Virus record (IMG/VR): IMGVR_UViG_3300005253_001115
Coordinates: 1-64,000 of that record
Reading direction: 5' to 3' (one strand)
Length of the DNA stretch: 64,000 nucleotides
Part shown: positions 1,089 through 24,017 of the stretch, piece after piece
Numbering within the stretch: position 1 is the stretch's first letter
How the letters are laid out: each line of letters starts with the position of its first letter
Notes under the pieces: generated by a model
Databases searched by the model: none
What the model saw: only the letters and a program-made list of their open reading frames with translations
What the model was told of the DNA's origin: nothing
Program-made: the position numbers and the translations under genes

Positions 1089-1090
1089 AC

Positions 1091-3167: not shown

Positions 3168-3274
3168 AACACTAAAGACCTTTCGTAGCGGCCGAACCCA
3201 TACCCGCGCTACCGGGTGGGTTAGGTGCCGGGGCAGGACCCGCAGTGCCCATGGAATACCTGCGGGGTTTTCTC

Positions 3275-3301
3275 TAAAGATCTTGAAGAAAGAACCGAAG
3301 G
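3275..3301 (+). promoter_or_regulatory. sigma28-like promoter
   Basis: TAAA-N15-ACCGAAGG. Confidence 0.45.
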
Positions 3302-3481
3302 ATGAGAATAGCGCGTGATGTTGATCTGGGCAGGCCAAATTTCTGCTTGGGGAGTCGGGTGGAGCGAACCGGGACGAAGTTCAAGCTATCGGCGTGGGCG
3401 ATGCACCCACGGATCGACCTGGGGAGCGGCAGTTGGGACCGGGATGTCTAAACCGGGCGTGCTCTATGCTGAGGAGGTATC

Positions 3482-3700
3482 ATGGCGAAACCAAAGATGC
3501 AACGACTGGCTTTTGACTTCCCTGCACAGGCCGTCGAAGAACTTGATAGGCTCAGGGCAGAGTTCACGCACCAGGAGACGCGGGCAGATCTCCTGCGAGA
3601 CGCGCTGAAGCTTTACAAGTTCCTGGCCGAGCACCGGGCAGATGGCTACGAGGTGTTGGTGCGCAAGATAGAGGGCGAGAAGATAATAATCGACTTCTAG
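3482..3700 (+). CDS. ribbon-helix-helix (CopG-like) DNA-binding protein
   Basis: Alternating strand RLAFDF followed by two helices (VEELDRL, TRADLLRDAL); GAGGAGG RBS. Confidence 0.7.
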   Translation: MAKPKMQRLAFDFPAQAVEELDRLRAEFTHQETRADLLRDALKLYKFLAEHRADGYEVLVRKIEGEKIIIDF

Positions 3701-3707
3701 GCGACAC

Positions 3708-3734
3708 TAAAGAACTTGCATAGCGGGCCGGTAG
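3708..3734 (+). promoter_or_regulatory. sigma28-like promoter
   Basis: TAAA-N15-GCCGGTAG. Confidence 0.5.
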
Positions 3735-3763
3735 AGGCCGCTCAAATCCTGAAAGGAGATAGC

Positions 3764-3967
3764 ATGAATCAGACCGAGATCACAATGTTTTTCGAAGAGC
3801 ATATCCGTTCAATGGCCCGAGCCACCTCAGTGGCTCGTGTAATGGTTGCGCTGCACAATGTGTGCGTTCACGGCAAAATCTTCGATGAGACTGGTGAGGA
3901 TGTGTCGGAAGAACAACTTGGTGAGCTGTTTGACCATTTCGAGGGCATCCTGGGTATCTTGAAATAG
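3764..3967 (+). CDS. hypothetical protein
   Basis: AGGAG RBS before ATG 3764. Confidence 0.6.
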   Translation: MNQTEITMFFEEHIRSMARATSVARVMVALHNVCVHGKIFDETGEDVSEEQLGELFDHFEGILGILK

Positions 3968-4157
3968 GTGTATCGAATCCCGAGGCACAGGAGAAACATG
4001 AGAGACATAATCGTGGGGCTTGGTGCGATTTTAGCGGCGGTTCTTTCCTACACCACGAACCACCACGTAATCTGGGCCATCTGCCACGGTATTCTCAGTT
4101 GGTTCTATGTGGCTTATCGTACTTTGGGGTACGGGGTATCTTGAAATAGGTGTATCG
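3952..4157 (+). repeat. 24-bp direct repeat (3952-3975 / 4134-4157)
   Basis: gggtatcttgaaataggtgtatcg occurs twice. Confidence 0.9.
3998..4144 (+). CDS. small membrane protein (48 aa, not in ORF track)
   Basis: AGGAG RBS; MRDIIVGLGAILAAVLSYTTNHHVIWAICHGILSWFYVAYRTLGYGVS. Confidence 0.7.
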   Translation: MRDIIVGLGAILAAVLSYTTNHHVIWAICHGILSWFYVAYRTLGYGVS

Positions 4158-4458
4158 TTTGTGGTTTTGTCGAAGAAAAACTAGAGCCGCAGCACGCAGA
4201 ATCGAAGAGGTTCTAGCGCGCACGGGAGGTAAATATCTGGATGCTTCAGCGTGGGCGAAGATCCGTGATCTTTCAGAGACTGAAGCACAACAACAGCTCA
4301 ACGAAGGCGTAGCTAAAGGGCTTTTCGAGAGATGTCTTCTGTACACGGGTTCTGAATTCTCTCCTTTCGTGGTTCCGCTGGGCTGGGACGTAAATCCTTC
4401 AGAATTTCGGGAAGTGTTCATCGCTTCAACAAAACGAAAAAGTTCCAGAAAAGACTAA
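4150..4458 (+). CDS. hypothetical protein
   Basis: 102-aa ORF. Confidence 0.5.
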   Translation: MYRLWFCRRKTRAAARRIEEVLARTGGKYLDASAWAKIRDLSETEAQQQLNEGVAKGLFERCLLYTGSEFSPFVVPLGWDVNPSEFREVFIASTKRKSSRKD

Positions 4459-4482
4459 AGAACTGCTGCGAACGGCCGAAGA
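4456..4482 (+). promoter_or_regulatory. sigma28-like promoter
   Basis: TAAA-N15-GCCGAAGA. Confidence 0.55.
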
Positions 4483-4680
4483 GTAGTATTCGTGCCGGGA
4501 GCTGTCAAAGGTGGCCCGGAAGAGCATGTGGTGGGGTGAAACCTCATCCTGTCGAGTACGCTGCCAAGTAGCCATGTGGGGTCCGTTTCGAGTCCCCGGA
4601 TACATGAAAACGACCACATAAGGGGAGTAGAGACCCCGTTGCTCGATTTTACTGCTGCAAGAGAAAATAGACTAAAGACC

Positions 4681-4709
4681 TTGCAGCGAACGAACAAAGG
4701 TGTTATATA
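4681..4709 (+). promoter_or_regulatory. sigma70-type promoter for a leaderless leader ORF
   Basis: TTGCAG-N17-TATATA with extended-10 TG; ATG follows at 4716. Confidence 0.6.
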
Positions 4710-4715
4710 TACAGC

Positions 4716-4859
4716 ATGGACAACAGAGAACTCAGAACCACCTCAGAAAGCGGTAGCCAGGGCGAGAGCACCGAGACCCTTATTACGGGCGACGGGACCA
4801 CTGTAGCCCCGGCCATAGTGGGACGAGAATGGGCGATGCGCGGTGGTGAGAGCGTGTAG
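4716..4859 (+). CDS. putative attenuator leader peptide (47 aa)
   Basis: No RBS; TAG directly precedes alternative hairpins. Confidence 0.55.
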   Translation: MDNRELRTTSESGSQGESTETLITGDGTTVAPAIVGREWAMRGGESV

Positions 4860-4862
4860 TCT

Positions 4863-4915
4863 GGGTACCAAAGAGTTTTTCAAACCCTTGGTACCCGCAG
4901 GTACCGGGGTTTTTT
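4863..4915 (+). terminator. intrinsic terminator with competing antiterminator
   Basis: cccttggtacc-cgca-ggtaccgggg-TTTTTT competes with gggtaccaa/ttggtaccc. Confidence 0.75.
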
Positions 4916-5070
4916 CGTTTAGGAGCATGATGAAGAATCTCACGAGAACTTACGATGCTGGTTGTTGCATAAACCAAGGAGCTATCCCTGTAGGCTGGCG
5001 GCTCGTGGTTTTTGGTTGGGAGATACGTTTAGCTCCGGTGGCTAGAAGGCCGGATTGCGGAGAACATTGA

Positions 5071-5145
5071 TGCGGCGTAGTTCAATGGCAGAACAGGGTC
5101 CTCATAAGGCTCATGTCGGTGGTTCGATTCCACCCGTCGCAACCA
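5071..5145 (+). tRNA. tRNA-Met(CAT), elongator Met or Ile2
   Basis: gggtc-CT-CAT-AA-ggctc, paired 1-72, CCA. Confidence 0.88.
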
Positions 5146-5158
5146 TTTAGAGGCTTAA

Positions 5159-5551
5159 ATGCACGTAAATGAAATTGGGGCTTTGGCCGAGATCAAAGTA
5201 GCTGCTAGGCTCATGGAGCAGGGGTACATAGTATCTAAGCCTGTTTTTGGTGATGCTCGCTACGACTTGCTGGCAGACAACGGAAGCATACATCGAGTAC
5301 AGTGTAAAAACGGACGTTTACGTAATGGCGTGGTAAAATTCAAGACTAGAAGCCACTGCGCGTTCACAGGCGCGGACAGTCCGTACACTTCGGACGAGAT
5401 CGAATTTTTTGGGGTCTACTGCCCTGAACTGGAAACTGTTTACCTCGTGCCTGTAGGCGACGTTCCTCAGGATAAAGGACATCTTAGAGTGGAGCCCACC
5501 AAAAATGGGCAGGTAAAAGGAATAACGCTAGCAGCTTCGTATCTGCTATAG
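5159..5551 (+). CDS. PD-(D/E)XK homing endonuclease (I-Ssp6803I-like), free-standing
   Basis: GALAE...P..D.RYDLL...RVQCK and FFGVYCP motifs. Confidence 0.8.
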   Translation: MHVNEIGALAEIKVAARLMEQGYIVSKPVFGDARYDLLADNGSIHRVQCKNGRLRNGVVKFKTRSHCAFTGADSPYTSDEIEFFGVYCPELETVYLVPVGDVPQDKGHLRVEPTKNGQVKGITLAASYLL

Positions 5552-5564
5552 GAAAAGGATATTT

Positions 5565-5640
5565 GGGGGCGTAGCTCATTTGGGAGAGCACCTGTTTTGC
5601 AATCAGGAGGTAGTCGGTTCGATCCCGACCGTTTCCACCA
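5565..5640 (+). tRNA. tRNA-Ala(TGC)
   Basis: Cloverleaf, G3.U70, CCA. Confidence 0.92.
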
Positions 5641-5646
5641 CATAAT

Positions 5647-5722
5647 GCACCATTAGCTCATTTGGAAGAGCGTCAGATTTCCAATCTGAAGGCGGTCGGA
5701 TCGTAGCCGACATGGTGCTCCA
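5647..5722 (+). tRNA. tRNA-Gly(TCC)
   Basis: tcaga-TT-TCC-AA-tctga; atypical T loop ATCGTAG; CCA. Confidence 0.88.
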
Positions 5723-5727
5723 TATAA

Positions 5728-5803
<76 letters not shown>

Positions 5804-5807
5804 CTTT

Positions 5808-5883
5808 GGTCCCATAGTTTATCGGTTAGAACACCGGGTTCTCAACCCGGAAAGGGAGGGTTCGATTCCCCCTGGGACTACCA
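5808..5883 (+). tRNA. tRNA-Glu(CTC)
   Basis: ccggg-TT-CTC-AA-cccgg, CCA. Confidence 0.92.
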
Positions 5884-5905
5884 TTTAGGAATGAAAGGAA
5901 CATAT

Positions 5906-5982
5906 TGGGGTGTGGCTTACCGGTAAAAGCGCCGAGCTGATATCTCGGAGACAGGCGGGTTCGACTCCCCCGACCCCAACCA
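5906..5982 (+). tRNA. tRNA-Ile(GAT)
   Basis: ccgag-CT-GAT-AT-ctcgg; a few stem mismatches; CCA. Confidence 0.8.
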
Positions 5983-5986
5983 ATTT

Positions 5987-6061
5987 GCCTCTATAGTTCA
6001 ATGGCTAGAATTGCTGTTTTGTACTCAGCGGATCTCAGTTCGATTCTGAGTAGGGGCTCCA
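5987..6061 (+). tRNA. tRNA-Thr(TGT)
   Basis: TT-TGT-AC loop, CCA. Confidence 0.85.
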
Positions 6062-6066
6062 CATAT

Positions 6067-6143
6067 ACGGCTGTAGCATAACCGGAGAATGCCCCGCCCT
6101 GCGAAGGCGGAGATTGTAGGTTCGAATCCTATCAGCCGTGCCA
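6067..6143 (+). tRNA. tRNA-Arg(GCG)
   Basis: ccgcc-CT-GCG-AA-ggcgg, CCA. Confidence 0.9.
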
Positions 6144-6144
6144 C

Positions 6145-6247
6145 GTCGAACTGGAGATGCGGGTTGGATTCCCGCCAGTTGCGCGATTGCGGACTGTAGC
6201 ATAAATGACAAGAACCGCGACAGGCGGTTCGTGAGTGCGCCGTTCAC
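6145..6247 (+). ncRNA. Y RNA (YrlA-like) circularly permuted tRNA mimic with GACAG hairpin (copy 3, 6212-6230) in the D loop
   Basis: 5' GT(C)GAAC pairs with 3' GTTCAC leaving a bulged C; order is T arm, loop-closed acceptor-like stem, D arm. Confidence 0.75.
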
Positions 6248-6254
6248 TTTACAT

Positions 6255-6321
6255 AGGGCGGGATCTGGGATCAGCAGAGCCTCCAAAACTCAGCAGCGGG
6301 GTTCGATTCCTCGTCGCCCTG
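6255..6321 (+). tRNA. tRNA-Trp(CCA), atypical with minimal D arm
   Basis: CT-CCA-AA loop, gatc-tgg-gatc D arm, canonical T arm, G73. Confidence 0.7.
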
Positions 6322-6354
6322 CGACTTTACTAAAGGAAAGAATGGAGAAGAGAC

Positions 6355-6912
6355 ATGAGTGGCAGCATCCTAGACAAGCGGTGGTTGACCCTGCACAAGG
6401 TTGAGGTAGAGGACATTTGCGTCTCTATTGCCGATCTGAACGCTGGGGAAAATCGCCCGGTCCACATCGGAACCGATGCGCAGAAGCACGGCAAGTTCTT
6501 GGATTTCGTCACGGCTGTGGTTGTGCTCGACCCCGGAAAGGGCGGACGTGTGTTCTACTGCAAGACGCGCGAGAAGCACATCAACAGCTTGCAGCACAAG
6601 CTCTTCACGGAGGTTGGCTTGAGCCTGGAGATTGCTCAGGCGCTTTGTGAGCATATCGACGCAGACCAGATTCAGGTTCACGTCGATGCGAACACCAACC
6701 TCAAGTGGGACTCCGGTAAGTATCACCAGCAGCTAGCGGGCATGGTTGTAGGTAGTGGCTTCAAGGCTGTCCTCAAGCCAGACGCCTGGGCAGCCTCGCA
6801 CGTTGCTGACCATGCTGTAAACGGCAAGAACGAGTCCTCGTCAACACGCCGCAGGAATAAGAAGGCCAGCAAGAGGGCAGGAAAGGCCGGTAAGAAGAGG
6901 TCGAAGAAGTAA
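6355..6912 (+). CDS. RNase H-like YkuK/DUF458 family protein with Lys/Arg-rich tail
   Basis: HIGTDAQ, FVTAVVV, KGGRVFY, VHVD and AASHVADH motifs. Confidence 0.85.
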   Translation: MSGSILDKRWLTLHKVEVEDICVSIADLNAGENRPVHIGTDAQKHGKFLDFVTAVVVLDPGKGGRVFYCKTREKHINSLQHKLFTEVGLSLEIAQALCEHIDADQIQVHVDANTNLKWDSGKYHQQLAGMVVGSGFKAVLKPDAWAASHVADHAVNGKNESSSTRRRNKKASKRAGKAGKKRSKK

Positions 6913-6921
6913 ATGAGTTTT

Positions 6922-6998
6922 GCCGCCGTAGCTCAATTGGATAGAGCATTCGGTTTCGACCCGAAAGGCTGGGGGTTCAAGTCCCTTCGGCGGTGCCA
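6922..6998 (+). tRNA. tRNA-Arg(TCG)
   Basis: ttcgg-TT-TCG-AC-ccgaa, CCA. Confidence 0.92.
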
Positions 6999-7441
6999 TG
7001 AAATATCCTGAGAAAGGAGACAAGTTTTGGTTCGTCCATGCCGGTTACCCGATAATTATCAGGGTGACCGTTATGGACAGCCATCATGGGGAAGTGGACA
7101 TTGACGAACCTGTCGGATTTGACTTAGAGTACACCGACCTGTACACTACGCTTGAAGAGGCAGCAGATGTTTTCTATAGAGACATGGAAGAGGCCAAGCT
7201 GCTCTGGGACGAGGACTTTCCAGGCCAGGGTCAGGTAGAGTTCGAGGAAGACTACACACTAGAGAAATATCGCGAAGACGTTGGTTACACCCTTCGAGTC
7301 TACGATGAGGAAGACGGGAAACAGCATACCCCACAGGGCTGGCCGGACAAGAGCGAGGACGAATGGTTCTCGTTGCGGGAAGTTCGAGAAATCCGAGGGA
7401 CGGACAGATCAGCGTTTGAGGAACTATACGGGGGCAGTTAG
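6998..7441 (+). CDS. hypothetical acidic protein
   Basis: 147-aa ORF filling the space between two tRNAs; ATG overlaps the tRNA CCA. Confidence 0.65.
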   Translation: MKYPEKGDKFWFVHAGYPIIIRVTVMDSHHGEVDIDEPVGFDLEYTDLYTTLEEAADVFYRDMEEAKLLWDEDFPGQGQVEFEEDYTLEKYREDVGYTLRVYDEEDGKQHTPQGWPDKSEDEWFSLREVREIRGTDRSAFEELYGGS

Positions 7442-7509
7442 CTCAGTCAGGCCAGAGCGCCGCCTTGACATGGCGGAGGTCACAGGTTCAAGTCCTGTAC
7501 TGCCCACCA
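7432..7509 (+). tRNA. tRNA-Val(GAC)
   Basis: ccgcc-TT-GAC-AT-ggcgg, CCA. Confidence 0.93.
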
Positions 7510-7524
7510 AATTTGGAGATTGCT

Positions 7525-7821
7525 GTGAACTTGCTGGATTGGATGCGCAAACGAAAGAGCACGCTCGGAGAGGCTAGCGGGGAACGAGTAAATGAGTCTA
7601 TCGGCAACCACGACAGGTTGTTGGCAGGGTTACCGCCGCAGAGGAAGGCGTGGCTGATTGACACGGATGGTCAGAAACACTACCACGATATAGACATTCG
7701 AGACAACACACCGAGCCAAGAGGTCCGAGTAAGGCTACACAAGATAGACGCAGACATCGAGGAGAAGGTTTACGAGTACGACAAAGAAGTAGACGGCTGG
7801 CTGATTTACTATCAGGTTTGA
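7525..7821 (+). CDS. hypothetical protein
   Basis: GGAG RBS with GTG 7525. Confidence 0.6.
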   Translation: MNLLDWMRKRKSTLGEASGERVNESIGNHDRLLAGLPPQRKAWLIDTDGQKHYHDIDIRDNTPSQEVRVRLHKIDADIEEKVYEYDKEVDGWLIYYQV

Positions 7822-7898
7822 GGCCCCTTAGCTCAACTGGACAGAGCAACGGTTTTCTACACCGTAGGTTGAGGGTTCGAATCCTTCAGGGGCTACCA
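7822..7898 (+). tRNA. tRNA-Arg(TCT)
   Basis: acggt-TT-TCT-AC-accgt, CCA. Confidence 0.93.
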
Positions 7899-7906
7899 AT
7901 TTGGAG

Positions 7907-8101
7907 ATGTTGATGTTAGACATACAAGCAGTACGACAGATTAACGGGGACTTGAGAATAGACGATGGGGACGAGGGGCCTCTTCTGACAATTCAATTTT
8001 TCGCGGAGTTTGCGAGCGGGTTTTCGAACGAGGATAAGGATCAAGTTTTGGAGGTGGTGGTCGATAAGCTCGTGGAGCTTCTAGCAGATCGCGATGAGTG
8101 A
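7907..8101 (+). CDS. hypothetical protein
   Basis: Short ORF overlapping the next start. Confidence 0.55.
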   Translation: MLMLDIQAVRQINGDLRIDDGDEGPLLTIQFFAEFASGFSNEDKDQVLEVVVDKLVELLADRDE

Positions 8102-8609
8102 ATACGGTCGGTACATGGAAGCTAACCTTCTCATCGAGAAGAATGACGGTTCTGACTGGACAGACGCGGAAGTAGAAGATCTGGTAGAAAAGCTGGTTTA
8201 CGACAATATGGAACACGGACTTATGGTTGGCGGTGGCATACAGCCCATGAGGACCAGAAAAGACGAATGTGACTATTGCGAGGACCCGGGACATAAAGAC
8301 ATCAGCGAAGAAGAACGTTGTGAAACGTGCGGTGGATCAGGCCGCAAACACGAGGAAGAACCAACTTCTGACCCTGAGGCAGAGCAAGAGTGGAAAGACA
8401 TATACGCTCCTATAGCTCAACGGACAGAGCAGTCCCCCCCTAAGGGAAAGGCTGAAGGTTCGAATCCTTCTAGGAGCGCCAATGTTCGGAACAGATGTGA
8501 TCGAGAAAGCGATGGAGAACCTGGGGACCAAGGTGGCCAAGGCGACAATAGCGGGGTTCGAGATTGGTGCGAAGATCCTGGGCGAGACCATAGCGGCGAA
8601 AATGGATGA
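8094..8609 (+). CDS. hypothetical protein with DnaJ-like CxxCxGxG pair; frame runs through tRNA-Arg(CCT)
   Basis: CDYCEDPG / CETCGGSG. Confidence 0.55.
   Translation: MSEYGRYMEANLLIEKNDGSDWTDAEVEDLVEKLVYDNMEHGLMVGGGIQPMRTRKDECDYCEDPGHKDISEEERCETCGGSGRKHEEEPTSDPEAEQEWKDIYAPIAQRTEQSPPKGKAEGSNPSRSANVRNRCDRESDGEPGDQGGQGDNSGVRDWCEDPGRDHSGENG
8406..8481 (+). tRNA. tRNA-Arg(CCT)
   Basis: CC-CCT-AA loop, CCA. Confidence 0.88.
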
Positions 8610-8736
8610 GCTGCACGAGAGAGAACAGCTCGCTCATCGTCAGGAAGAGGAACGGGAAGCGCACAGGCACAGTCCTTAGGAAGAAATGTACCCTTAAAGC
8701 AGCAGAAAGGCGCTTAAAGGGCGATTAAAGCACCAG

Positions 8737-8811
8737 GGTCCCATAGTTTACTGGCTAGAATTCCGGGTTTTCACCCCGGGGAAGGGGGATCGAAACCCCC
8801 TGGGATCACCA
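8737..8811 (+). tRNA. tRNA-Glu(TTC)
   Basis: ccggg-TT-TTC-AC-cccgg, CCA. Confidence 0.9.
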
Positions 8812-8824
8812 TTTATGCGAATAT

Positions 8825-8904
8825 AGGGTCGTATCCCCTCCGTCTTATAAGCGGTAGAAAGGGTAACTGGTTACATGTGGGTTCAAGTCCCACCGGCCCC
8901 ACCA
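8825..8904 (+). tRNA. D-armless tRNA-like RNA with TAT (Ile) anticodon
   Basis: Acceptor, T arm and ACCA intact; ccgt-CT-TAT-AA-gcgg; no D arm; extra gtaac/gttac hairpin. Confidence 0.6.
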
Positions 8905-8931
8905 TTATCCCTTCCTTAGGGGAAGTTTTAC

Positions 8932-9007
8932 ACCGGTGTAACTCAGTGGCCAGAGTGCCTCTTTTACACGGAGGAAGTCGTCGGTTCAACTCCGGCCACC
9001 GGTACCA
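8932..9007 (+). tRNA. tRNA-Val(TAC)
   Basis: cctct-TT-TAC-AC-ggagg, CCA. Confidence 0.92.
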
Positions 9008-9012
9008 TATAC

Positions 9013-9087
9013 GCGGGTATAGCTCAGTGGTAGAGCATCTTGTTGCCAACGAGAAGGCCGGGGGTTCGAGCCCCCCTACCCGCTCCA
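9013..9087 (+). tRNA. tRNA-Gly(GCC)
   Basis: TT-GCC-AA loop, U73, CCA. Confidence 0.93.
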
Positions 9088-9092
9088 AACAC

Positions 9093-9168
9093 GCCCGTTT
9101 GGTGATAACGGTTAGCATTAGCCCCTGGTATGGGCTAGGAAAGGGTTCGACTCCCTTAACGGGCTCCA
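9093..9168 (+). tRNA. tRNA-Thr(GGT)
   Basis: agccc-CT-GGT-AT-gggct, CCA. Confidence 0.88.
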
Positions 9169-9272
9169 TTTTGTTTTGACCGTTACCAGAAGAAGCGGCG
9201 AACGGGAAGGTAAAACAGAAAGGAGGATACATGTTTATCACAATCTAGCCCGTAATGGGCCAGGAGGATAGC

Positions 9273-9554
9273 ATGTATCGACGAGAGAGAGATCTGGCGC
9301 ACACGTTGTGGGCGCAAAGACGCTTTGCTACAGTGCGGTCTTGGGGGTGGTGGGGAGACGTTTTTCCCGATCTTGGAGAGTGGGCGTCCCAGAGTGGCCG
9401 CTTTCGTAAAGAAACTAGGCTTGGGTGCCCGAACGGTCGTAGTAAGTGCGGAGTGTGCAGCGGAGGGGTTCGAGAACCTACTCGCCAGGAAGTCCGCTCA
9501 AATATTGACTTTGAAGAATACCGAAAGGAGGTAGACATGTCAGCGTTTCAATAG
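9273..9554 (+). CDS. hypothetical basic Cys-containing protein
   Basis: AGGAGG RBS. Confidence 0.6.
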   Translation: MYRRERDLAHTLWAQRRFATVRSWGWWGDVFPDLGEWASQSGRFRKETRLGCPNGRSKCGVCSGGVREPTRQEVRSNIDFEEYRKEVDMSAFQ

Positions 9555-9569
9555 TAAGGAGAAACTGAC

Positions 9570-10163
9570 ATGTATGTTATCGAACCCGCTCTCTGTCGAG
9601 AGCAGGAAATCTATCTGTATTGCTGTGGGAGACTTTCCCGCACTTTCTACGGCCTTCATCACTTGTGTGAGGAATTGTCCGTTGACTTTATCGAGAAGTG
9701 GGTAGGCGAACATTACGGCGAACAGATTAAGATCGTCACCAAGAGGGCTCACGGGCTCCATTGGCCCAAAGACAGGGCAAAGTGGGAGTACCAATTCCCC
9801 GAAGAGTTCTACATCGAACCTGCGATGTACATTGTTCGAACGGATGAAGGAGAGAAACTCACTTCCGATTTCTTGAAGAAGGCGTGCAGCCTATTCTATT
9901 ACAATCGTCGTTACGCTCGCCGGGACTATTACAAGCCCCGGATGGGCCGGAAGACTCAGTGGTGCTACGGAAATTACCGAGCACCCAAGATCACTAACGA
10001 GAAGCGTCAGGCTTTCTGCATCAAGGAAGATGGCGAACCTCCGATTCGCGCTCGTCGAAACATTACCAATTTGACGGACGCCTGGGACGACACTAGCAGA
10101 CACAACGATGCGTGCTGGAAGACCCAGTACAAGAAGAGGAAGAGACAGTATCGACCTAAGTAG
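9570..10163 (+). CDS. hypothetical protein with basic C-terminus
   Basis: AAGGAG RBS, 197 aa. Confidence 0.7.
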   Translation: MYVIEPALCREQEIYLYCCGRLSRTFYGLHHLCEELSVDFIEKWVGEHYGEQIKIVTKRAHGLHWPKDRAKWEYQFPEEFYIEPAMYIVRTDEGEKLTSDFLKKACSLFYYNRRYARRDYYKPRMGRKTQWCYGNYRAPKITNEKRQAFCIKEDGEPPIRARRNITNLTDAWDDTSRHNDACWKTQYKKRKRQYRPK

Positions 10164-10252
10164 TACGCAGGTCCAGTATGGTACGTTCCCGGGGATTCCG
10201 GTTCGAGTCCGGTAATGGTTCAGGGCACTCTAGAATGTCCACTGCGTCAAAT

Positions 10253-10327
10253 GCTGCCATAGCTTAACAGGTAAAGTACGCCACTCGTAATGGCGCGTTC
10301 GGGGTTCGAGTCCTCGTGGCAGCTCCA
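10253..10327 (+). tRNA. tRNA-Thr(CGT)
   Basis: cgcca-CT-CGT-AA-tggcg, CCA. Confidence 0.92.
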
Positions 10328-19277: not shown

Positions 19278-19346
19278 GCTGTCCGATACTACACTAAAGA
19301 GCTTGTGCATCGCGAAAACTTTTCGGGTGCTTATATATTGGATACA

Positions 19347-19424
19347 ATGATGGTCTCAGTAAAACAGTCCCAATCGAAGCCGAGTCAGCCCAGTAATCCT
19401 GGGCAGGAGACTGGTGTGCTGTAG
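19347..19424 (+). CDS. putative attenuator leader peptide (25 aa)
   Basis: Leaderless ATG after TATATT; followed by a terminator. Confidence 0.45.
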   Translation: MMVSVKQSQSKPSQPSNPGQETGVL

Positions 19425-19450
19425 CTCGAACTGAAACGAGCGACTTTTCG

Positions 19451-19484
19451 CGCCCCGGCCTCCAACGACCGGGGCGTTTTTTTT
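19451..19484 (+). terminator. intrinsic terminator upstream of second tRNA array
   Basis: cgccccgg...ccggggcg plus T8. Confidence 0.8.
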
Positions 19485-19980: not shown

Positions 19981-20055
19981 TCCCCGTAATGCACAAGGCG
20001 TGCAGTCGTCCTGTTAAGGCGTATGAGCTAGGTTCGATTCCTAGACGGGGAGCCA
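19981..20055 (+). tRNA. tRNA-Asn(GTT)
   Basis: CT-GTT-AA loop, G73, CCA. Confidence 0.9.
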
Positions 20056-20067
20056 ATTTAAGGCAAA

Positions 20068-20159
20068 CAAAGGTCATATCCCGGTCGCCAGAGAGGCGGT
20101 ACGGGTATCGCGACAGGCGATAAGGTAGGCTAGCGTTTGTATAGCCGGGAAGTTCTTTG
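20068..20159 (+). ncRNA. uncharacterised multibranch RNA carrying GACAG hairpin copy 6 (20106-20122)
   Basis: Outer caaagg/tctttg and tcccgg/ccggga helices; inner cgcc-AGAGA-ggcg and tatcgc-GACAG-gcgata. Confidence 0.55.
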
Positions 20160-20164
20160 CTCCC

Positions 20165-20239
20165 GGCCCTTATAACTCAATTGGCAGAGTGCCGGGCCTG
20201 AAGCCCGGATGTTGCAGGTTCGAGTCCTGCTAAGGGCCA
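20165..20239 (+). tRNA. atypical tRNA: 8-bp acceptor (His-like G-1:C73), loop CC-TGA-AG
   Basis: Perfect stems, no U33, no CCA. Confidence 0.6.
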
Positions 20240-20247
20240 CAGAGAGT

Positions 20248-20262
20248 GCCGCGACAGGCGGC
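20248..20262 (+). repeat. GACAG hairpin copy 7
   Basis: gccgc-GACAG-gcggc. Confidence 0.85.
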
Positions 20263-20283
20263 GAGCGACCGGCAACAGTTTAA

Positions 20284-20360
20284 CAGGGTGTAGTTCAGTC
20301 TGGAAGAATCCTCCCCTCGGAAGGGAGAGGTCGTTGGTTCAAATCCAACCACCCTGACCA
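20284..20360 (+). tRNA. tRNA-Pro(CGG)
   Basis: ctccc-CT-CGG-AA-gggag, CCA. Confidence 0.92.
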
Positions 20361-20380
20361 TTTGATTACGAAAGGATAAA

Positions 20381-20652
20381 CAGACGGGCGGACAATCGCT
20401 CCAAGGAGAGGAAAGTCGGGACTGCACGGTACAGCCTAGAGGGTAACACCCTTCCACCGTGAGGTGCGTGACGGCAACAGAGACGAGCCTATTTGGTTAG
20501 GTTGAAACGGGCGACAGCGTGGGCGCAGCAACCGAAAGCAGGGGACATTGATCGTACCAGAGAGTCCCCGGGTATCGGGCAAAGATTCTAGTGGTAACAC
20601 TAGAGCAAGACGAATGATTGTCGATAACAGAATCCCGCTTATAGCCCATCTG
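20381..20652 (+). ncRNA. rnpB: RNase P RNA (compact, bacterial type)
   Basis: GAGGAAAGTCGGGAC and AACAGAATCCCGCTTA (P4), GCAACAGAGA, TGAAACGG, terminal P1 cagacgggc/gcccatctg. Confidence 0.93.
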
Positions 20653-20670
20653 CAATTTTAGGAGAAGAAC

Positions 20671-21108
20671 ATGTTGGCATTGGAAGATTTGGCAGGAGCT
20701 GACGAAACATTGGTTCGTGACCATATCGTGTGCGAGTTCGAGATCGAGGAGAAGGAGCTTGACGGATTCGAGGTCTTGATTGCTTACGAGAGTTGCGGTA
20801 GTTGGGGTTGCGATTCGAGCAACTGGTTCTTGCTCCGCAAGGACGGGCAGTTGTACGAGAACCACGGCTCGCACTGCTCGTGCAACGGGTTCGAGGAGCA
20901 GTGGGCTCCTGAGGAGACGAGCGTTGATTACTTGTTGTCGGAGAAGTTCTACTTTCCGTCGGGTGGGTACGACACCAACGGAAACGAAGAGGCCGTGAGT
21001 CGAGAGATTCGCCGTTTTTTTACAGTGACAGAAGCGACTGGCCGAAGGGCTGCAATCGCTGCACAGAAGGCACGGGCCGCAAACCCGTACATTGAAACGG
21101 AGGAATAG
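20671..21108 (+). CDS. hypothetical protein with C-terminal RRxAIxxQKAR tag
   Basis: GSHCSC motif; ends TGRRAAIAAQKARAANPYIETEE. Confidence 0.75.
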   Translation: MLALEDLAGADETLVRDHIVCEFEIEEKELDGFEVLIAYESCGSWGCDSSNWFLLRKDGQLYENHGSHCSCNGFEEQWAPEETSVDYLLSEKFYFPSGGYDTNGNEEAVSREIRRFFTVTEATGRRAAIAAQKARAANPYIETEE

Positions 21109-21114
21109 AAATAT

Positions 21115-21191
21115 TGGGAACTAGCTCAACTGGCTAGAGCGTCGGTCTCTGACACCGAAGGTTCTGGGTTCGAACCCCAGGTTCCCAACCA
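21115..21191 (+). tRNA. tRNA-Gln(CTG)
   Basis: tcggt-CT-CTG-AC-accga, CCA. Confidence 0.92.
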
Positions 21192-21199
21192 TACATTAT

Positions 21200-21275
21200 G
21201 GACCCCTAGCTCAACAGGTAGAGCGGCTGTCTCTTAAACAGCAGGTTCAGGGTTCGAGTCCCTGGGGGTTCACCA
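21200..21275 (+). tRNA. tRNA-Lys(CTT)
   Basis: gctgt-CT-CTT-AA-acagc, CCA. Confidence 0.93.
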
Positions 21276-21280
21276 TATAT

Positions 21281-21326
21281 CCGGGTGTAGCGCAGTCTGG
21301 TAGCGCGCCTGCTTTGGGAGCAGGAT
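21281..21326 (+). pseudogene. 5' half of tRNA-Pro(TGG), T arm and acceptor 3' strand lost
   Basis: D arm and cctgc-TT-TGG-GA-gcagg intact, then sequence switches. Confidence 0.8.
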
Positions 21327-21419
21327 TTGGGTGGCACTACTTGCCCAGAAAACTTACAGCCTTTGTGCCTTAATTGCCATAGAGACAAAACGGTACAGGA
21401 GTCGAAAAATAGAAAATGA
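21327..21419 (+). pseudogene. C-terminal remnant of an HNH endonuclease
   Basis: LGGTTCPENLQPLCLNCHRDKTVQESKNRK-stop, no start. Confidence 0.75.
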
Positions 21420-21421
21420 TT

Positions 21422-21496
21422 CGGGGTATGGCGCAGAGGCAGCGCGCCGCGTTTGGGACGCGGAGGTCGAGATTTCGAAATTCTCTACCCCGACCA
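21422..21496 (+). tRNA. tRNA-Pro(TGG)
   Basis: ccgcg-TT-TGG-GA-cgcgg, CCA. Confidence 0.88.
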
Positions 21497-21503
21497 TACA
21501 TAA

Positions 21504-21591
21504 GGACCGGTAGCAAAATTGGCTGAATGCAGCGGACTTTTAACCCGCAGGAGAAATCCCACTGTGAGTTCGAATCTCACCCGGTTCACCA
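21504..21591 (+). tRNA. tRNA-Lys(TTT) with long variable arm
   Basis: CT-TTT-AA loop; gga-GAAA-tcc extra arm; CCA. Confidence 0.8.
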
Positions 21592-21597
21592 TATTAA

Positions 21598-21685
21598 GGA
21601 AGAGTGGCAGATAGGAATCGCGCCCGGTTGCTAACCGGAGGCCGGGGGCAACCCCGAGTGGGATCGTTACCCACCTCTTCCGCCA
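21598..21685 (+). tRNA. tRNA-Ser(GCT)
   Basis: TT-GCT-AA, long variable arm, G73, CCA. Confidence 0.88.
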
Positions 21686-21692
21686 TACATAT

Positions 21693-21767
21693 TGGGGTGT
21701 CATCCAACGGCTAGGATACCGCTCTTTGAAAGCGAGGATAAAGGTTCGACTCCTTTCACCCCATCCA
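21693..21767 (+). tRNA. tRNA-Gln(TTG)
   Basis: cgct-CT-TTG-AA-agcg, CCA. Confidence 0.88.
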
Positions 21768-21770
21768 TTT

Positions 21771-21856
21771 AGAAGGTACCGTGCAGGGCACAAACTGGGC
21801 TTGAACCCCAGGGCATCGCGAGAGCGGTGGGAGATCGTTACTTCTACCTTCTGCCA
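21771..21856 (+). tRNA. tRNA-Ser(TGA)
   Basis: ctggg-CT-TGA-AC-cccag, long variable arm, G73, CCA. Confidence 0.8.
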
Positions 21857-21973
21857 TACAGCCAGGAAGAGTGACAGAGCGGCTATTGTGCCTGTTTCGA
21901 AAACAGTGGCCTGGGCGAGAGCCCAGCGGGGGTTCGAGTCCTCCCTCTTCCGGTACTTCTACCTTCTGCCATA
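21839..21973 (+). repeat. 20-bp direct repeat of the tRNA-Ser(TGA) 3' end (21839-21858 / 21954-21973)
   Basis: tacttctaccttctgccata occurs twice. Confidence 0.9.
21865..21952 (+). tRNA. tRNA-Ser(CGA), no encoded CCA
   Basis: TT-CGA-AA, long variable arm, G73. Confidence 0.88.
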
Positions 21974-22016
21974 TTGGGTGTCGTTCCTACGTATTATTTG
22001 TATGTAGGGGACTGAA

Positions 22017-22430
22017 ATGGCTCGTGTTTTTGACAATCAGCCGGATACAATATATCCAATTACAGCGCCCACGCGCCGTAAACTGGCTGTAGCTCTGGAA
22101 GATACGGAAGCAGCCAATGAGCTTGTTGACGCCATAGATTCTTCCAGATCTGTTGAGATTTCTCAGGTGTCCTTGCATCATACAGCCCTAGCCATAGATG
22201 ACGTTATTTTATGCGACGCGACCAACGGGCCAGTTGTCGTTACTCTTTTCCCTGCAACAGAAGCCAACTCCGGGAAAGTCCTAGAGATCAAGAAAATCGA
22301 CCCCACAGGAAACATTGTGACTGTGGACGGCAATGGCGCTAACATAGATGGTGGTCCGACTGCTGTGTTAACCATTCAGTTTGAAACAATCACAATTGTT
22401 ACTGCCGCTTCGGCATGGTGGATACTATGA
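22017..22430 (+). CDS. putative virion structural protein
   Basis: Beta-rich, DATNGPVVVTL...IKKID..GNIVTVDG tail-fibre-like segment. Confidence 0.6.
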   Translation: MARVFDNQPDTIYPITAPTRRKLAVALEDTEAANELVDAIDSSRSVEISQVSLHHTALAIDDVILCDATNGPVVVTLFPATEANSGKVLEIKKIDPTGNIVTVDGNGANIDGGPTAVLTIQFETITIVTAASAWWIL

Positions 22431-23626
22431 CATACAGACCCTTTGTTGAAGACAGCAAGGCTGCTTTTGGAGAACTTCAGATATCGGAGTTGTCCCCAGT
22501 CTTTCAGAATACTTTTGAATACACGGTGGATAATACTGAGTTGCTTACCAACACCGTTGTTGCTGGTGGCACGGTAACTCAAGCAAACGGAATGGGGACG
22601 GTAGGTACCTCAACAACGACAGCAAGTACCGCATTGATGGAATCTAGGCAACATGCAAGATATCATGCTGGACAAGGCGGTCTATCAAGATTCACTGCCC
22701 TTTGGTCTGCTCCGGTAGAGGGCACTGAGATGTATGTTGGACTAGCGGACGAGATTGGCTCTATTGCTGCTTTTGAGAATGGTTTTATGGTAGGGTACGA
22801 TGGAGTTACGTTCGGCTTCCATAGGTTTCAGAACGACACCAAGATTACTATAGCATTATCCGAGTGGGATGATCCGCTAGACGGATCAGGCCCTAGTGGC
22901 ATGACTATAAACACAGCCATGTTGAACGTTTTTCAGATTCAATTCCAATATTTAGGAGCGGGACCAATTAAGATCTTCATAGAGGATGATACTAACGGCA
23001 AATTTATCTTGGCCCACACAGTGAGTTATGTCAATCAGAATACTGAACCGTCCGTCCATAATCCTAATTTCCACCACATCATGTGGGTAAACAACGGCGG
23101 CACAACAAGCGATATGATTATCAGGTCAGGCTCTTTCGGTTTCTACATCGAGGGAAGAACAGATTTGATACAACTTCATCAGCCTCAATTTGCTTCCGGC
23201 ACTCAGCAAAAAACCAGTGTCACAGATGAGGTTGCCATTTTAACGATCAGAAACAAGACTACATACGCCTCGAAGACGAATTTCATAGATATTTTGATTC
23301 AAGGATTATTGGGTGCCATTGATGCAAATCAAGCGTCTAATATTGGGGTAGTTCGAATTGTCAAAAATGCAACACTTGGGGGTGCTCCTGATTATTCGGA
23401 CATAAACTCTAGTGATTCAGTGGTAGAGATGGATACCGATGGAACCGACGTGACAGGTGGACAGGAGTTGATAGGTACTCCGCTTTCTGGACAAAATGAT
23501 AAAGACGATAGAGACGTTACCGATTTGAAAATCATTCTGAATCCAGGGGATACCTTGACTGTTGCAGGCTCCAGTGGCAATAGTGCTACAATGGCTGGAG
23601 GCATTCTTTGGCGGGAGCTGTTCTAG
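22427..23626 (+). CDS. putative virion structural beta-sandwich protein
   Basis: About 400 aa, T/G/N-rich, more AT-rich codon usage than flanks. Confidence 0.6.
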   Translation: MTYRPFVEDSKAAFGELQISELSPVFQNTFEYTVDNTELLTNTVVAGGTVTQANGMGTVGTSTTTASTALMESRQHARYHAGQGGLSRFTALWSAPVEGTEMYVGLADEIGSIAAFENGFMVGYDGVTFGFHRFQNDTKITIALSEWDDPLDGSGPSGMTINTAMLNVFQIQFQYLGAGPIKIFIEDDTNGKFILAHTVSYVNQNTEPSVHNPNFHHIMWVNNGGTTSDMIIRSGSFGFYIEGRTDLIQLHQPQFASGTQQKTSVTDEVAILTIRNKTTYASKTNFIDILIQGLLGAIDANQASNIGVVRIVKNATLGGAPDYSDINSSDSVVEMDTDGTDVTGGQELIGTPLSGQNDKDDRDVTDLKIILNPGDTLTVAGSSGNSATMAGGILWRELF

Positions 23627-23647
23627 CACCTACACTAAAGGGTAACC

Positions 23648-23929
23648 ATGCAAGAGGTGCCCGATATCAATCTAATCCCCCACGAGGGCGACATTATCTG
23701 CGACGAGTGCAGACAGGAGGCAAGTTTTCTGATCGGTCCCGAGCCGATAAATGACGGCAAGAACAGGTGCAAAGCATGCTTTGGGCAGCATTATCCACAG
23801 TACAAGGACGCCGTGACAGACTTTTCTGACCTCCTAGACTTGATGCTGGAGATGCAGTCGCGTATGATGACGACGGACATGATGCACGAATTATACGGGA
23901 ACCAAGAGGAACCCGAAGAAAAGGATTAA
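23648..23929 (+). CDS. hypothetical zinc-finger protein
   Basis: CDEC...CKAC. Confidence 0.6.
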   Translation: MQEVPDINLIPHEGDIICDECRQEASFLIGPEPINDGKNRCKACFGQHYPQYKDAVTDFSDLLDLMLEMQSRMMTTDMMHELYGNQEEPEEKD

Positions 23930-24017
23930 GGAGAGTTGCCAGAGAGGCCAAATGGGCTTGCTTGGAAAGCAATGCGCGGTAAAACGCACGGGGGTTCGAC
24001 TCCCCCACTCTCCGCCA
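23930..24017 (+). tRNA. tRNA-Ser(GGA)
   Basis: TT-GGA-AA, long variable arm, CCA. Confidence 0.92.

What the first reader, a model, noticed from the sequence alone, without database searches (positions are those of the whole stretch)
4681..4915. Leader-peptide attenuator gating the first tRNA array
Seen: a sigma70-type promoter, a leaderless 47-codon ORF, then, 4 nt after its TAG, a strand gggtaccaa that can pair with ttggtaccc in the 5' arm of the terminator. Known attenuation logic: a ribosome at the stop masks the antiterminator strand, so transcription terminates; a stalled ribosome allows read-through. The leader is not rich in one amino acid. Inference: it senses general translation failure, such as host tRNA cleavage, and switches on spare tRNAs and the Y RNA.
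Basis: partly seen in the sequence, partly recalled or inferred. Interest (0 to 1): 0.72.

Follow-up and report, generated by a model that had tools for sequence, protein, structure and literature searches.

The report
Codon-matched attenuators gating phage tRNA arrays
A giant phage puts a tiny translated leader gene and a switchable terminator in front of each block of its tRNA genes, and each leader is written mostly in the codons read by the tRNAs that follow, so the phage probably makes a block of tRNAs only when those very tRNAs run short.

Summary
At 4681-4915 there is a promoter with an extended -10, a 47-codon ORF starting 6 nt after it, a strand (4863-4871) that pairs with the 5' arm of an intrinsic terminator (4886-4915), and tRNA genes behind it. 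The unit is conserved in 11 related phage contigs. The frame and stop position are kept, and the two mutually exclusive helices both show compensatory changes.

The leader is not neutral in composition: 72-87% of its residues are M, A, G, E, I, T, R, V or W, the amino acids of the tRNAs in the array behind it.

I predicted and then found two more units of the same design. One is at window 19347-19484, rich in S, Q, K, P and N, before the Asn/Ser/Pro/Gln/Lys array. One is in relatives only, rich in L, D, F, H, Y and C, before the His/Leu/Asp/Tyr/Phe/Cys array. The three sets partition all 20 amino acids (3x3 chi-square p = 8e-9).

Best explanation: classical ribosome-mediated attenuation, as in the his and thr operons, but applied to tRNA genes, with each array switched on by shortage of its own tRNAs. 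No Y RNA is gated. Nothing has been tested experimentally. I found no precedent in the literature searched.

The parts
4669..4679 (+). TAGACTAAAGA element directly upstream of the -35 hexamer
   Evidence: The motif recurs before many genes across the genome. It is conserved in most homologs of this unit but absent in L018, whose leader promoter still works out as TTGACT-17 nt-TATATA. Its role is unknown.
4681..4709 (+). Promoter: -35 TTGCAG, 17-nt spacer, extended -10 TG-T-TATATA
   Evidence: TGTTATAT is invariant in the six homologs aligned in A2 and is also present in L013 and L022; L026 has a different start context. The -35 varies (TTGCAG, TTGACT, TTGCAA) but keeps the 17-nt spacing.
4716..4859 (+). 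Leader ORF 1: 47 codons plus TAG, with the start 6 nt after the -10 and no Shine-Dalgarno sequence
   Evidence: All indels among homologs are in frame. The N-terminus (MDN) and the C-terminus (GREWAMRGGE-like) are conserved, and pairwise dN/dS is mostly 0.45-0.85 with one pair at 1.5. 34 of 47 residues have a cognate tRNA in the array behind it.
4863..4896 (+). Antiterminator hairpin: strand A (4863-4871) pairs with strand B (4888-4896), with a small inner helix in the loop
   Evidence: Fold results are. On 12 aligned units 82.5% of cells are paired, 5 pairs carry changes on both sides, and the covariation score is 0.219 against 0.084 in shuffles (0 of 500 reach it).
4886..4915 (+). Intrinsic terminator: stem 4886-4909 (strand B with strand C) plus a T6 run
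   Evidence: Found by the scan. 96% of cells are paired, with 3 compensatory pairs among 7 homologs. On 12 units 85.8% are paired. It shares strand B with the antiterminator.
4927..5070 (+). Small ORF with a Shine-Dalgarno sequence (47 codons, Cys-rich) between the terminator and tRNA-Met. This is not a Y RNA.
   Evidence: It is conserved with synonymous changes in L013, L017 and L018 and is absent in G001.
5071..10327 (+). tRNA array 1 (Met Ala Gly Ala Glu Ile Thr Arg Arg Val Arg Arg Glu Val Gly Thr Thr), interrupted by ORFs
   Evidence: ARAGORN and Rfam.
19328..19337 (+). Extended -10-like promoter of leader 2 (TG-C-TTATAT), 10 nt before the ATG
   Evidence: It is identical in G001 and L022.
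19347..19424 (+). Leader ORF 2: 25 codons plus TAG, of which 15 are Ser, Gln, Lys, Pro or Asn
   Evidence: It is conserved in frame in G001, L022, L026 and L028. Its codons call on all 11 distinct anticodons of array 2.
19406..19463 (+). Antiterminator of leader 2: the last sense codons (19406-19419) pair with the 5' arm and loop of the terminator
   Evidence: Nascent-RNA folds give -24.8 kcal/mol in the window and -21 to -33 in four relatives.
19450..19484 (+). Intrinsic terminator of leader 2: GC-rich stem plus T8
19981..24017 (+). tRNA array 2 (Asn Ser Pro Gln Lys Pro Lys Ser Gln Ser Ser Ser), with an RNase P RNA inside it

Best explanation
The region is one of a set of ribosome-mediated transcription attenuators that control the phage's tRNA gene arrays.

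How it would work. A promoter with an extended -10 starts an mRNA at or next to the ATG of a short leader ORF. The 5' strand of an antiterminator hairpin lies right after the stop codon (leader 1) or in the last sense codons (leaders 0 and 2). Its partner is the 5' arm of an intrinsic terminator.

If the ribosome translates the leader smoothly and reaches the stop codon, it covers that strand. The terminator then forms and transcription ends before the tRNA genes. If the ribosome stalls earlier in the leader, the antiterminator forms first and the polymerase reads through into the array.

What is sensed. Each leader is written mainly in codons for the amino acids whose tRNAs are encoded behind it. 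The stall signal is therefore shortage of those tRNAs, or of their charged forms, and the product relieves the stall. This is a demand-driven feedback loop, separate for each of three arrays that together cover all 20 amino acids.

Shown here: the sequence elements, their conservation, the two alternative helices, the geometry relative to the stop codon, and the composition match. Inferred: translation of the leaders, coupling of ribosome and polymerase, the direction of the switch, and the physiological trigger.
For: (1) Anatomy and alternative folds of leader 1.

(2) Conservation in relatives found through a neighbouring RNA and a neighbouring protein. The ORF keeps its frame through indels of 3-21 nt, its start and its stop position. 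The middle of the peptide changes freely (pairwise dN/dS mostly 0.45-0.85, one pair 1.5), yet 74-87% of residues remain in the array-1 set (MAGEITRVW) in every homolog.

(3) The two helices share strand B and both covary. Terminator: 96% paired, covariation score 0.30 against 0.155 in shuffles, 0 of 500 reaching it. Antiterminator on 12 units: 5 pairs and 11 cells with changes on both sides, score 0.219 against 0.084, 0 of 500. Example of strand A with strand B: GGGTACC/GGTACCC in the window, GGGCAC/GTGCCC in L026, GGGTACA/TGTGCCC in L022.

(4) In G001, L026 and L031 the terminator ends 2-18 nt before tRNA-Met, so the tRNA can only be reached by read-through.

(5) Composition match. For one representative of each leader class, cognate residues are 13 of 23, 35 of 47 and 15 of 25. 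The 3x3 table gives chi-square 43.6, p = 8e-9. None of 200,000 random 6/9/5 partitions of the amino acids does as well. Each leader is in the top 0.1-0.3% of small ORFs of the genome for its own set.

(6) Leaders 2 and 0 were predicted from the idea before I read their sequences.

(7) Leader 2's 25 codons call on 11 of 11 distinct anticodons of array 2, which occurs in 5e-4 of coding windows.

(8) Thirteen units from the three classes were folded with a ribosome placed at the stop codon. In twelve the same two-state fold appears: the antiterminator 5' strand lies inside the ribosome's footprint, with nascent folds of -17 to -33 kcal/mol, and the terminator forms once that footprint is masked. 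The thirteenth (the second L1-type copy in L022) was cut short by my own T-run detection, so it says nothing either way.

(9) Relatives with mixed, unpartitioned arrays (L024, L029, L030) gave no such units in my scan.
Against: There is no transcript, ribosome or reporter data. The only RNA-labelled run found was uninformative.

The polymerase is not identified. Resemblance to sigma-70 promoters is the only basis for the promoter call.

The terminator is thermodynamically favoured in every homolog, so read-through must be kinetic. No pause hairpin or 1:2-type element that would synchronise ribosome and polymerase was found.

The antiterminator covariation was counted on an alignment fitted to that structure. 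On the plain MAFFT alignment of seven close homologs it was weak, with 37 of 500 shuffles reaching it.

The composition match is not perfect. The window's own leader 1 carries a 7-codon insert rich in Ser and Gln. Positions 2-3 (D, N) are non-cognate. Array 0 of L015 holds a tRNA-Lys and array 1 of L013 a tRNA-Gln.

The leader 1 enrichment alone is modest against real protein windows, at 1-3%.

Relatives carry a tubulin gene. If these phages enclosed their DNA in a phage nucleus, transcription and translation could not be coupled. No chimallin-like or Pfam-detectable phage RNA polymerase gene was found, but that is weak negative evidence.
Confidence: 0.65

Rival explanations
1. A general sensor of translation stress. 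Any slowing of ribosomes, from antibiotics, global tRNA loss or ribosome damage, frees the antiterminator. The amino-acid make-up of the leader plays no specific role.
For: The geometry is the same as in the best explanation. With 8-9 different amino acids in leader 1, many kinds of stress would stall the ribosome. RNA-repair genes nearby (RtcB; a protein with CCA-adding-type domains; an RNase P RNA) fit a setting of damage to the translation apparatus.
Against: It does not explain why three leaders have three different, complementary biases that match their own arrays (p = 8e-9). It does not explain why composition is kept while the sequence drifts. It does not explain why leader 2 samples every anticodon of its array.
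Confidence: 0.15
2. Ordinary small genes followed by ordinary, possibly leaky, terminators. The tRNAs are made by constitutive partial read-through, or later in infection by a phage antitermination factor or a terminator-insensitive polymerase. On this view the A:B pairing and the composition match have no regulatory role.
For: Terminators are stable and always favoured at equilibrium. The leader 1 C-terminus is conserved at the peptide level, as in a real small protein. The TAGACTAAAGA motif genome-wide hints at a phage-specific transcription programme.
Against: The antiterminator strand keeps its position relative to the stop codon and covaries with strand B. The same two-state layout recurs in three sequence-unrelated or very distantly related leader classes. 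The match between leader composition and array is very unlikely by chance. The leader peptides have no homologs outside this phage group.
Confidence: 0.12
3. Control by nascent-peptide arrest, as with TnaC or SecM. The conserved C-terminal peptide of leader 1 (with an invariant Trp 8-10 residues before the stop) would stall the ribosome at or near the stop codon in response to a small molecule or a factor, and this would set the termination frequency.
For: The conserved end of the peptide, with synonymous changes beneath it. The stop codon and its spacing to strand A are nearly fixed.
Against: Leaders 0 and 2 have different C-termini, and their conservation is explained by the antiterminator RNA strand they encode. 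Trp is itself cognate: a tRNA-Trp sits in array 1 of L013, L018, L022, L026 and L031. There is no evidence for a ligand.
Confidence: 0.05

Closest known systems
Leader-peptide attenuators of amino-acid biosynthetic operons (his, thr, ilvGMEDA, leu, pheA and trp of enterobacteria)
   Same: A short ORF enriched in regulatory codons; an intrinsic terminator before the regulated genes; an antiterminator that shares a strand with the terminator; ribosome position decides which hairpin forms. The thr and ilv leaders also sense several amino acids at once.
   Different: The regulated genes are tRNA genes, not biosynthetic enzymes. The codon sets are large (5-9 amino acids) and partition the whole code among three units. 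There is no obvious region-1 or pause hairpin, so the default without translation should be read-through rather than super-attenuation. The mRNA is leaderless or nearly so. The setting is a phage.
pheST (pheM leader) attenuator of E. coli
   Same: A leader peptide rich in cognate codons controls a component of the translation apparatus for that same amino acid, which amounts to feedback on decoding capacity.
   Different: It controls an aminoacyl-tRNA synthetase and one amino acid. Here the tRNAs themselves are controlled, for many amino acids at once.
T-box riboswitches
   Same: A transcription terminator/antiterminator switch that responds to the state of a specific tRNA.
   Different: A T-box binds uncharged tRNA directly through the RNA, without translation. 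No T-box was found here by Rfam, and this unit has a conserved translated ORF instead.
Antibiotic-responsive ribosome-mediated attenuators (bmrB-bmrCD, vmlR, lmo0919, mef/msr leaders)
   Same: A ribosome that completes a short leader ORF allows termination. A ribosome stalled within it frees an antiterminator.
   Different: Those respond to drug-stalled ribosomes regardless of codon identity and control resistance genes.

Membership tests
Ribosome-mediated (leader-peptide) transcription attenuator | A short ORF lies between the promoter and the regulated genes and is conserved as an ORF | tested here: met
   A 38-47-codon ORF is kept in frame, with the same start and stop position, in 11 homologous units. 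Leaders 2 and 0 are likewise kept in 5 and 4 units.
Ribosome-mediated (leader-peptide) transcription attenuator | An intrinsic terminator (GC-rich hairpin plus U run) lies between the leader and the regulated genes | tested here: met
   Covariation. In three relatives the terminator lies 2-18 nt before the first tRNA.
Ribosome-mediated (leader-peptide) transcription attenuator | An alternative antiterminator helix is mutually exclusive with the terminator | tested here: met
   Strand B is shared by both helices. Nascent-RNA folds give -11 to -33 kcal/mol. Compensatory changes appear in 5 pairs. On the unfitted alignment of close homologs the signal is weak.
Ribosome-mediated (leader-peptide) transcription attenuator | The antiterminator strand is placed so that a ribosome at the end of the ORF masks it | tested here: met
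   In leader 1 strand A starts 3-5 nt after the stop codon. In leaders 0 and 2 it lies in the last 5-6 sense codons. Masking positions -15 to +12 around the stop gives the terminator as the best fold in 12 of the 13 units tested; the thirteenth was cut short by my script and is uninformative.
Ribosome-mediated (leader-peptide) transcription attenuator | The leader is enriched in codons tied to the product of the regulated genes | tested here: met
   The 3x3 chi-square is p = 8e-9, and 0 of 200,000 random partitions do as well.
Ribosome-mediated (leader-peptide) transcription attenuator | A pause or 1:2-type structure synchronises ribosome and polymerase (present in trp and his) | tested here: inconclusive
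   No conserved upstream competitor of strand A was seen in leader 1 folds. A short hairpin partly overlaps the strand in leader 0.
Ribosome-mediated (leader-peptide) transcription attenuator | Read-through depends on translation of the leader and on supply of charged cognate tRNA | not testable with these tools
   This needs reporters, Term-seq or ribosome profiling. The one RNA-labelled public run gave nothing usable.
T-box riboswitch | Stem I with a specifier loop and a T-box antiterminator bulge that binds the tRNA acceptor end | tested here: not met
   No Rfam T-box match in the window at gathering score, nor at E up to 10 in 4200-5600.
   No Rfam Y RNA or YrlA match. No TROVE domain in the genome. 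The region downstream of the terminator is a conserved protein-coding ORF.

The most novel reading that the evidence does not exclude
This would be a regulatory principle not described before: tRNA genes autoregulated by leader peptides written in their own codons. The phage's whole tRNA complement is split into three regulons: His/Leu/Asp/Tyr/Phe/Cys, Met/Ala/Gly/Glu/Ile/Thr/Arg/Val/Trp, and Asn/Ser/Pro/Gln/Lys. Each would be switched on only when its own tRNAs become limiting. That gives the phage a built-in, codon-resolved gauge of the host's decoding capacity, and possibly an inducible answer to host anticodon nucleases.
Probability: 0.55. Interest if true: 0.9.

Novelty: new variant of a known kind. 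Interest (0 to 1): 0.85.

Why it matters
Why phages carry tRNA genes, and how they are expressed, has been debated for decades. The main ideas are codon compensation, replacement of degraded host tRNAs, and escape from tRNA-cleaving defences (for example PMC10264068, PMC11464382 and PMC11555353, listed).

If these attenuators work as proposed, the phage itself measures shortage of specific tRNA sets and responds by making them. That would be direct genomic evidence that phage tRNAs are supplied on demand.

It would also extend classical attenuation to RNA genes and give three orthogonal, naturally evolved, codon-set-specific sensors that can be tested in simple reporters.

It further offers a simple computational signature for finding regulated tRNA arrays elsewhere: a small ORF and a terminator before a tRNA array, with leader composition matching the array.

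Full-text searches found no description of leader-peptide attenuators before tRNA arrays.

Tried and rejected
- A blastn search of the region against deposited phages found only tRNA-Met similarity.
- An exact pattern of the three GGTACC strands in IMG/VR hit one unrelated low-GC contig, which I discarded.
- The 47-aa peptide has no homologs in 5.8 billion proteins and no Pfam match.
- The upstream 102-aa ORF has no relatives in IMG/VR and is absent from G001.
- Pattern scans for more leader copies in IMG/VR and GTDB genomes found nothing new.
- RNA evidence: one run labelled metatranscriptomic held only scraps, mostly other organisms' tRNAs.
- My first duplex test, which used a fixed -15 to +12 window, cut strand A of leader 1 short and was uninformative for that class. 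I replaced it with the shuffle test.
- A strict motif search for more extended -10 plus leaderless ATG units in the genome found only leader 1.
- Leader 0 is not in this record. The record starts inside a tRNA-Cys-like sequence and CheckV rates it 89% complete.
- More distant kin fragments (G002-G005) hold no tRNAs.
- A look at an unrelated N4-like phage tRNA cluster was not pursued.
- Y RNA and Ro60: no support.
- Phage-nucleus markers: none found in this record or G001.

Full report
**Setting**

The window is the first 64 kb of a 266,640-bp virus record with 53% G+C. CheckV rates the record 89% complete. All 33 tRNA genes of the record lie in the window. So do an RNase P RNA, an RtcB ligase, and a 1036-aa protein with poly(A) polymerase-head (CCA-adding family) and HD domains. 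The tRNA genes are all on the + strand and form blocks.

**The observation**

- -35 TTGCAG at 4681-4686.
- A 17-nt spacer, then an extended -10, TG-T-TATATA, at 4701-4709.
- ATG at 4716, six nt after the -10, with no Shine-Dalgarno sequence.
- 47 sense codons, then TAG at 4857-4859.
- Strand A, GGGTACCAA, at 4863-4871.
- Strand B, TTGGTACCC, at 4888-4896.
- A terminator stem at 4886-4909 (B with strand C) followed by T6. This is the best terminator hit of the scan.

Three GGTACC sites within 42 nt occur nowhere else in a genome that has 85 such sites. RNA folded without the 3' arm forms the A:B hairpin (-16.6 kcal/mol). With the first 13-16 nt from the stop codon masked, as by a terminating ribosome, the terminator is the best fold (-18.1).

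**Relatives**

Deposited phages gave nothing. An IMG/VR contig (G001) was found through a neighbouring RNaseH-like gene. Six metagenome contigs were found through a 21-mer of the conserved RNA just upstream. Further contigs were found through homologs of the RNaseH-like protein at 63-77% identity. Together these give 11 distinct copies of the leader 1 unit.
- Most copies keep TGTTATAT, exactly 6 nt, then ATGGACAAC. L018 and L013 have other -35 hexamers (TTGACT, TTGCAA) at the same 17-nt spacing.
- The ORF is 38-47 codons long. Its indels are all multiples of three. Its stop sits 3-5 nt before strand A.
- The middle of the peptide changes freely; pairwise dN/dS is mostly 0.45-0.85, with one pair at 1.5.

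**The two helices**

On seven close homologs the terminator is 96% paired, with three compensatory pairs. Its covariation score is 0.30 against 0.155 in shuffles, and 0 of 500 shuffles reach it. On the same alignment the antiterminator is 86% paired but hardly varies.

Adding the distant relatives, aligned with a covariance model, the antiterminator shows changes on both sides in 5 pairs and 11 cells. Its score is 0.219 against 0.084 in shuffles (0 of 500), and the slid controls reach at most 0.088. On the same alignment the terminator scores 0.226 against 0.129 (1 of 500). Examples of strand A with strand B are GGGTACC/GGTACCC in the window, GGGCAC/GTGCCC in L026, and GGGTGCAA/TTGTACCT in G001, where a base is lost from all three strands at once. 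That alignment was fitted to the structure, which favours it.

**Does the terminator gate the tRNAs?**

In the window a 47-codon ORF with a Shine-Dalgarno sequence (4927-5070) and then tRNA-Met (5071) follow the terminator. No promoter-like site was found between them. In G001, L026 and L031 the T run ends 2-18 nt before tRNA-Met. There the tRNA can be transcribed only by read-through.

**The leader is not neutral**

The array behind leader 1 encodes tRNAs for Met, Ala, Gly, Glu, Ile, Thr, Arg and Val, plus Trp in relatives. These amino acids make up 72% of the window's leader and 74-87% of its homologs, against 50% in the phage's long ORFs. That puts the window's leader in the top 0.3% of the genome's small ORFs.

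I therefore predicted that the second array (Asn Ser Pro Gln Lys ...) would have its own leader, rich in those residues. It does.
- An ORF of 25 codons at 19347-19424 sits behind a TG-C-TTATAT promoter. 15 of its codons are Ser, Gln, Lys, Pro or Asn.
- A GC-rich terminator with T8 follows at 19450-19484.
- Its codons call on all 11 distinct anticodons of the array, which happens in 5e-4 of coding windows.
- Its last codons (19406-19419) pair with the terminator's 5' arm and loop in nascent RNA, at -24.8 kcal/mol.
- It is conserved in frame in G001, L022, L026 and L028.

Relatives carry a third array (His Leu Asp Tyr Phe Cys) that this truncated record lacks. Directly before it is a 23-24-codon ORF with a run such as LDFHSLYFCLLLD. 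Its last codons mimic the terminator's 3' arm and pair with its 5' arm (-22 to -27 kcal/mol). The tRNA follows within about 10 nt.

The three sets partition the 20 amino acids.
- For one representative of each class, the 3x3 table of leader residues against sets gives chi-square 43.6, p = 8e-9.
- None of 200,000 random 6/9/5 partitions of the amino acids matches as well.
- Relatives whose arrays mix amino acids (L024, L029, L030) gave no such units in my scan.

**Mechanism**

Thirteen units of the three classes were folded with a ribosome placed at the stop codon. Twelve of them share one layout: the antiterminator's 5' strand lies within the footprint of that ribosome, and its partner is the terminator's 5' arm. 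The thirteenth, the second L1-type copy in L022, was cut short by my script's T-run detection, so its fold tells nothing.

A ribosome that finishes the leader therefore favours termination. A ribosome stalled earlier, at the cognate codons, leaves the antiterminator free and allows read-through into the tRNA genes that would relieve the stall. This is the logic of the his, thr and ilv attenuators, and of pheST, applied to tRNA genes.

Steps shown: the elements, their conservation, the alternative helices, the geometry, and the composition match. Steps inferred: translation of the leaders, coupling, direction of the switch, and the trigger. The trigger could be a mismatch with host tRNA pools, tRNA decay during infection, or host anticodon nucleases. 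The RNA-repair genes nearby fit the last option but do not prove it.

**Weak points**

- There are no expression data.
- The polymerase is unknown.
- The terminator is favoured at equilibrium everywhere, so the switch must be kinetic. No pause element was found.
- The match is imperfect. The window's leader 1 has a Ser/Gln-rich 7-codon insert. Positions 2-3 (D, N) are non-cognate. A tRNA-Lys sits in array 0 of L015 and a tRNA-Gln in array 1 of L013.
- Relatives carry a tubulin gene next to array 0, so compartmentalised transcription has to be excluded. I found no chimallin-like gene and no Pfam-detectable phage RNA polymerase, but these are weak negatives.

No Y RNA is gated. The stretch after the terminator is a conserved small protein gene. 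The conserved structured RNA at about 4494-4650 lies upstream with its own promoter. Rfam and a TROVE search found nothing.

**Novelty**

Leader-peptide attenuation is a textbook mechanism. I found no report of its use on tRNA gene arrays, with large codon sets that divide the genetic code among three units of a phage, in five full-text searches. I rate it a new variant of a known kind, of high interest, with the mechanism at about 0.65 confidence.

Noticed in passing
window 4494-4650: A conserved structured RNA of about 150 nt with its own promoter (TAGACTAAAGA element plus GCCGAAGAGTAGTAT). It is more conserved than the leader ORF, with 47 predicted pairs of which 3 are compensatory. It lies upstream of the attenuator.
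   Followed up: partly
window 4669-4679, 4452-4461, 3169-3178, 3704-3713, 19291-19300, 24161-24170, and about 40 more places genome-wide: The motif (T)AGACTAAAGA recurs just upstream of genes and promoters on both strands. At some sites it forms a palindrome, as at 38752. It may be a phage-specific promoter or operator element. Blocks of DNA present or absent between relatives are bounded by it.
   Followed up: partly
window 4927-5070: A 47-codon Cys-rich ORF with an AGGAG ribosome-binding site lies between the terminator and tRNA-Met. Its TGA abuts the tRNA. It is conserved with synonymous changes in L013, L017 and L018 and is absent in G001. Its function is unknown.
   Followed up: partly
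window 5159-5551 and 19497-19910: Endonuclease genes (PD-(D/E)XK family PF11645, and an HNH/endonuclease VII-like ORF) are inserted between an attenuator and its array. They are absent at the same places in G001 and look like mobile insertions that ride on the regulated transcripts.
   Followed up: partly
window 3179-4446: A 1.3-kb block with four small ORFs is absent from G001. There the cupin gene's end joins directly to the promoter of the conserved RNA.
   Followed up: partly
window 1-72 and record end 266,560-266,640: The record starts inside a tRNA-like 3' half, and G001 has a tRNA-Cys at this place. The record's right end does not complete it. In relatives the missing left part holds array 0, its leader and a tubulin gene.
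   Followed up: partly
window 1018-1090: A tRNA-like sequence that ARAGORN reports only at a lowered threshold, with an 8-nt anticodon loop (four-base 'ttta'). L031 has a similar odd call at the same relative place, before tRNA-Leu(taa).
   Followed up: partly
window 12392-12464: A tRNA with a shortened anticodon loop (ARAGORN reports anticodon 'ta'; Rfam tRNA score 54 bits). It sits where relatives have tRNA-Ile(tat).
   Followed up: no
window 13308-13344 and 13359-13385: An abiF RNA motif (Rfam, 59 bits) is followed at once by TGTTATTT, 7 nt, then ATGGAC, which resembles the leaderless-type start of leader 1.
   Followed up: no
window 20380-20657: A bacterial-type RNase P RNA (149 bits) is embedded in tRNA array 2, behind attenuator 2.
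   Followed up: no
L022 7793-7971: A second, diverged copy of the leader 1 unit, with a TTGACA promoter, a 37-codon ORF again rich in the array-1 amino acids, and the antiterminator/terminator pair. It lies 430 nt upstream of the main copy, next to an HNH gene remnant.
   Followed up: partly
L016 565-1090: After its leader 1 terminator this contig has TGTGTTATAT, 7 nt, then ATGGAC, which starts an HTH/HNH-type gene inserted before tRNA-Met. The same promoter-start module is reused.
   Followed up: no
L024, L029, L030: More distant relatives (63-67% RNaseH-like identity) have tRNA arrays that mix amino acids. They have no leader-plus-terminator units by my scan. L029 and L030 carry an RF-1-domain gene nearby.
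   Followed up: partly
L022 17130-17348; L026 17464-17682: Relatives encode a small protein with eIF-1a/IF1-type Pfam hits between arrays 1 and 2. This is of possible interest for leaderless initiation.
   Followed up: no
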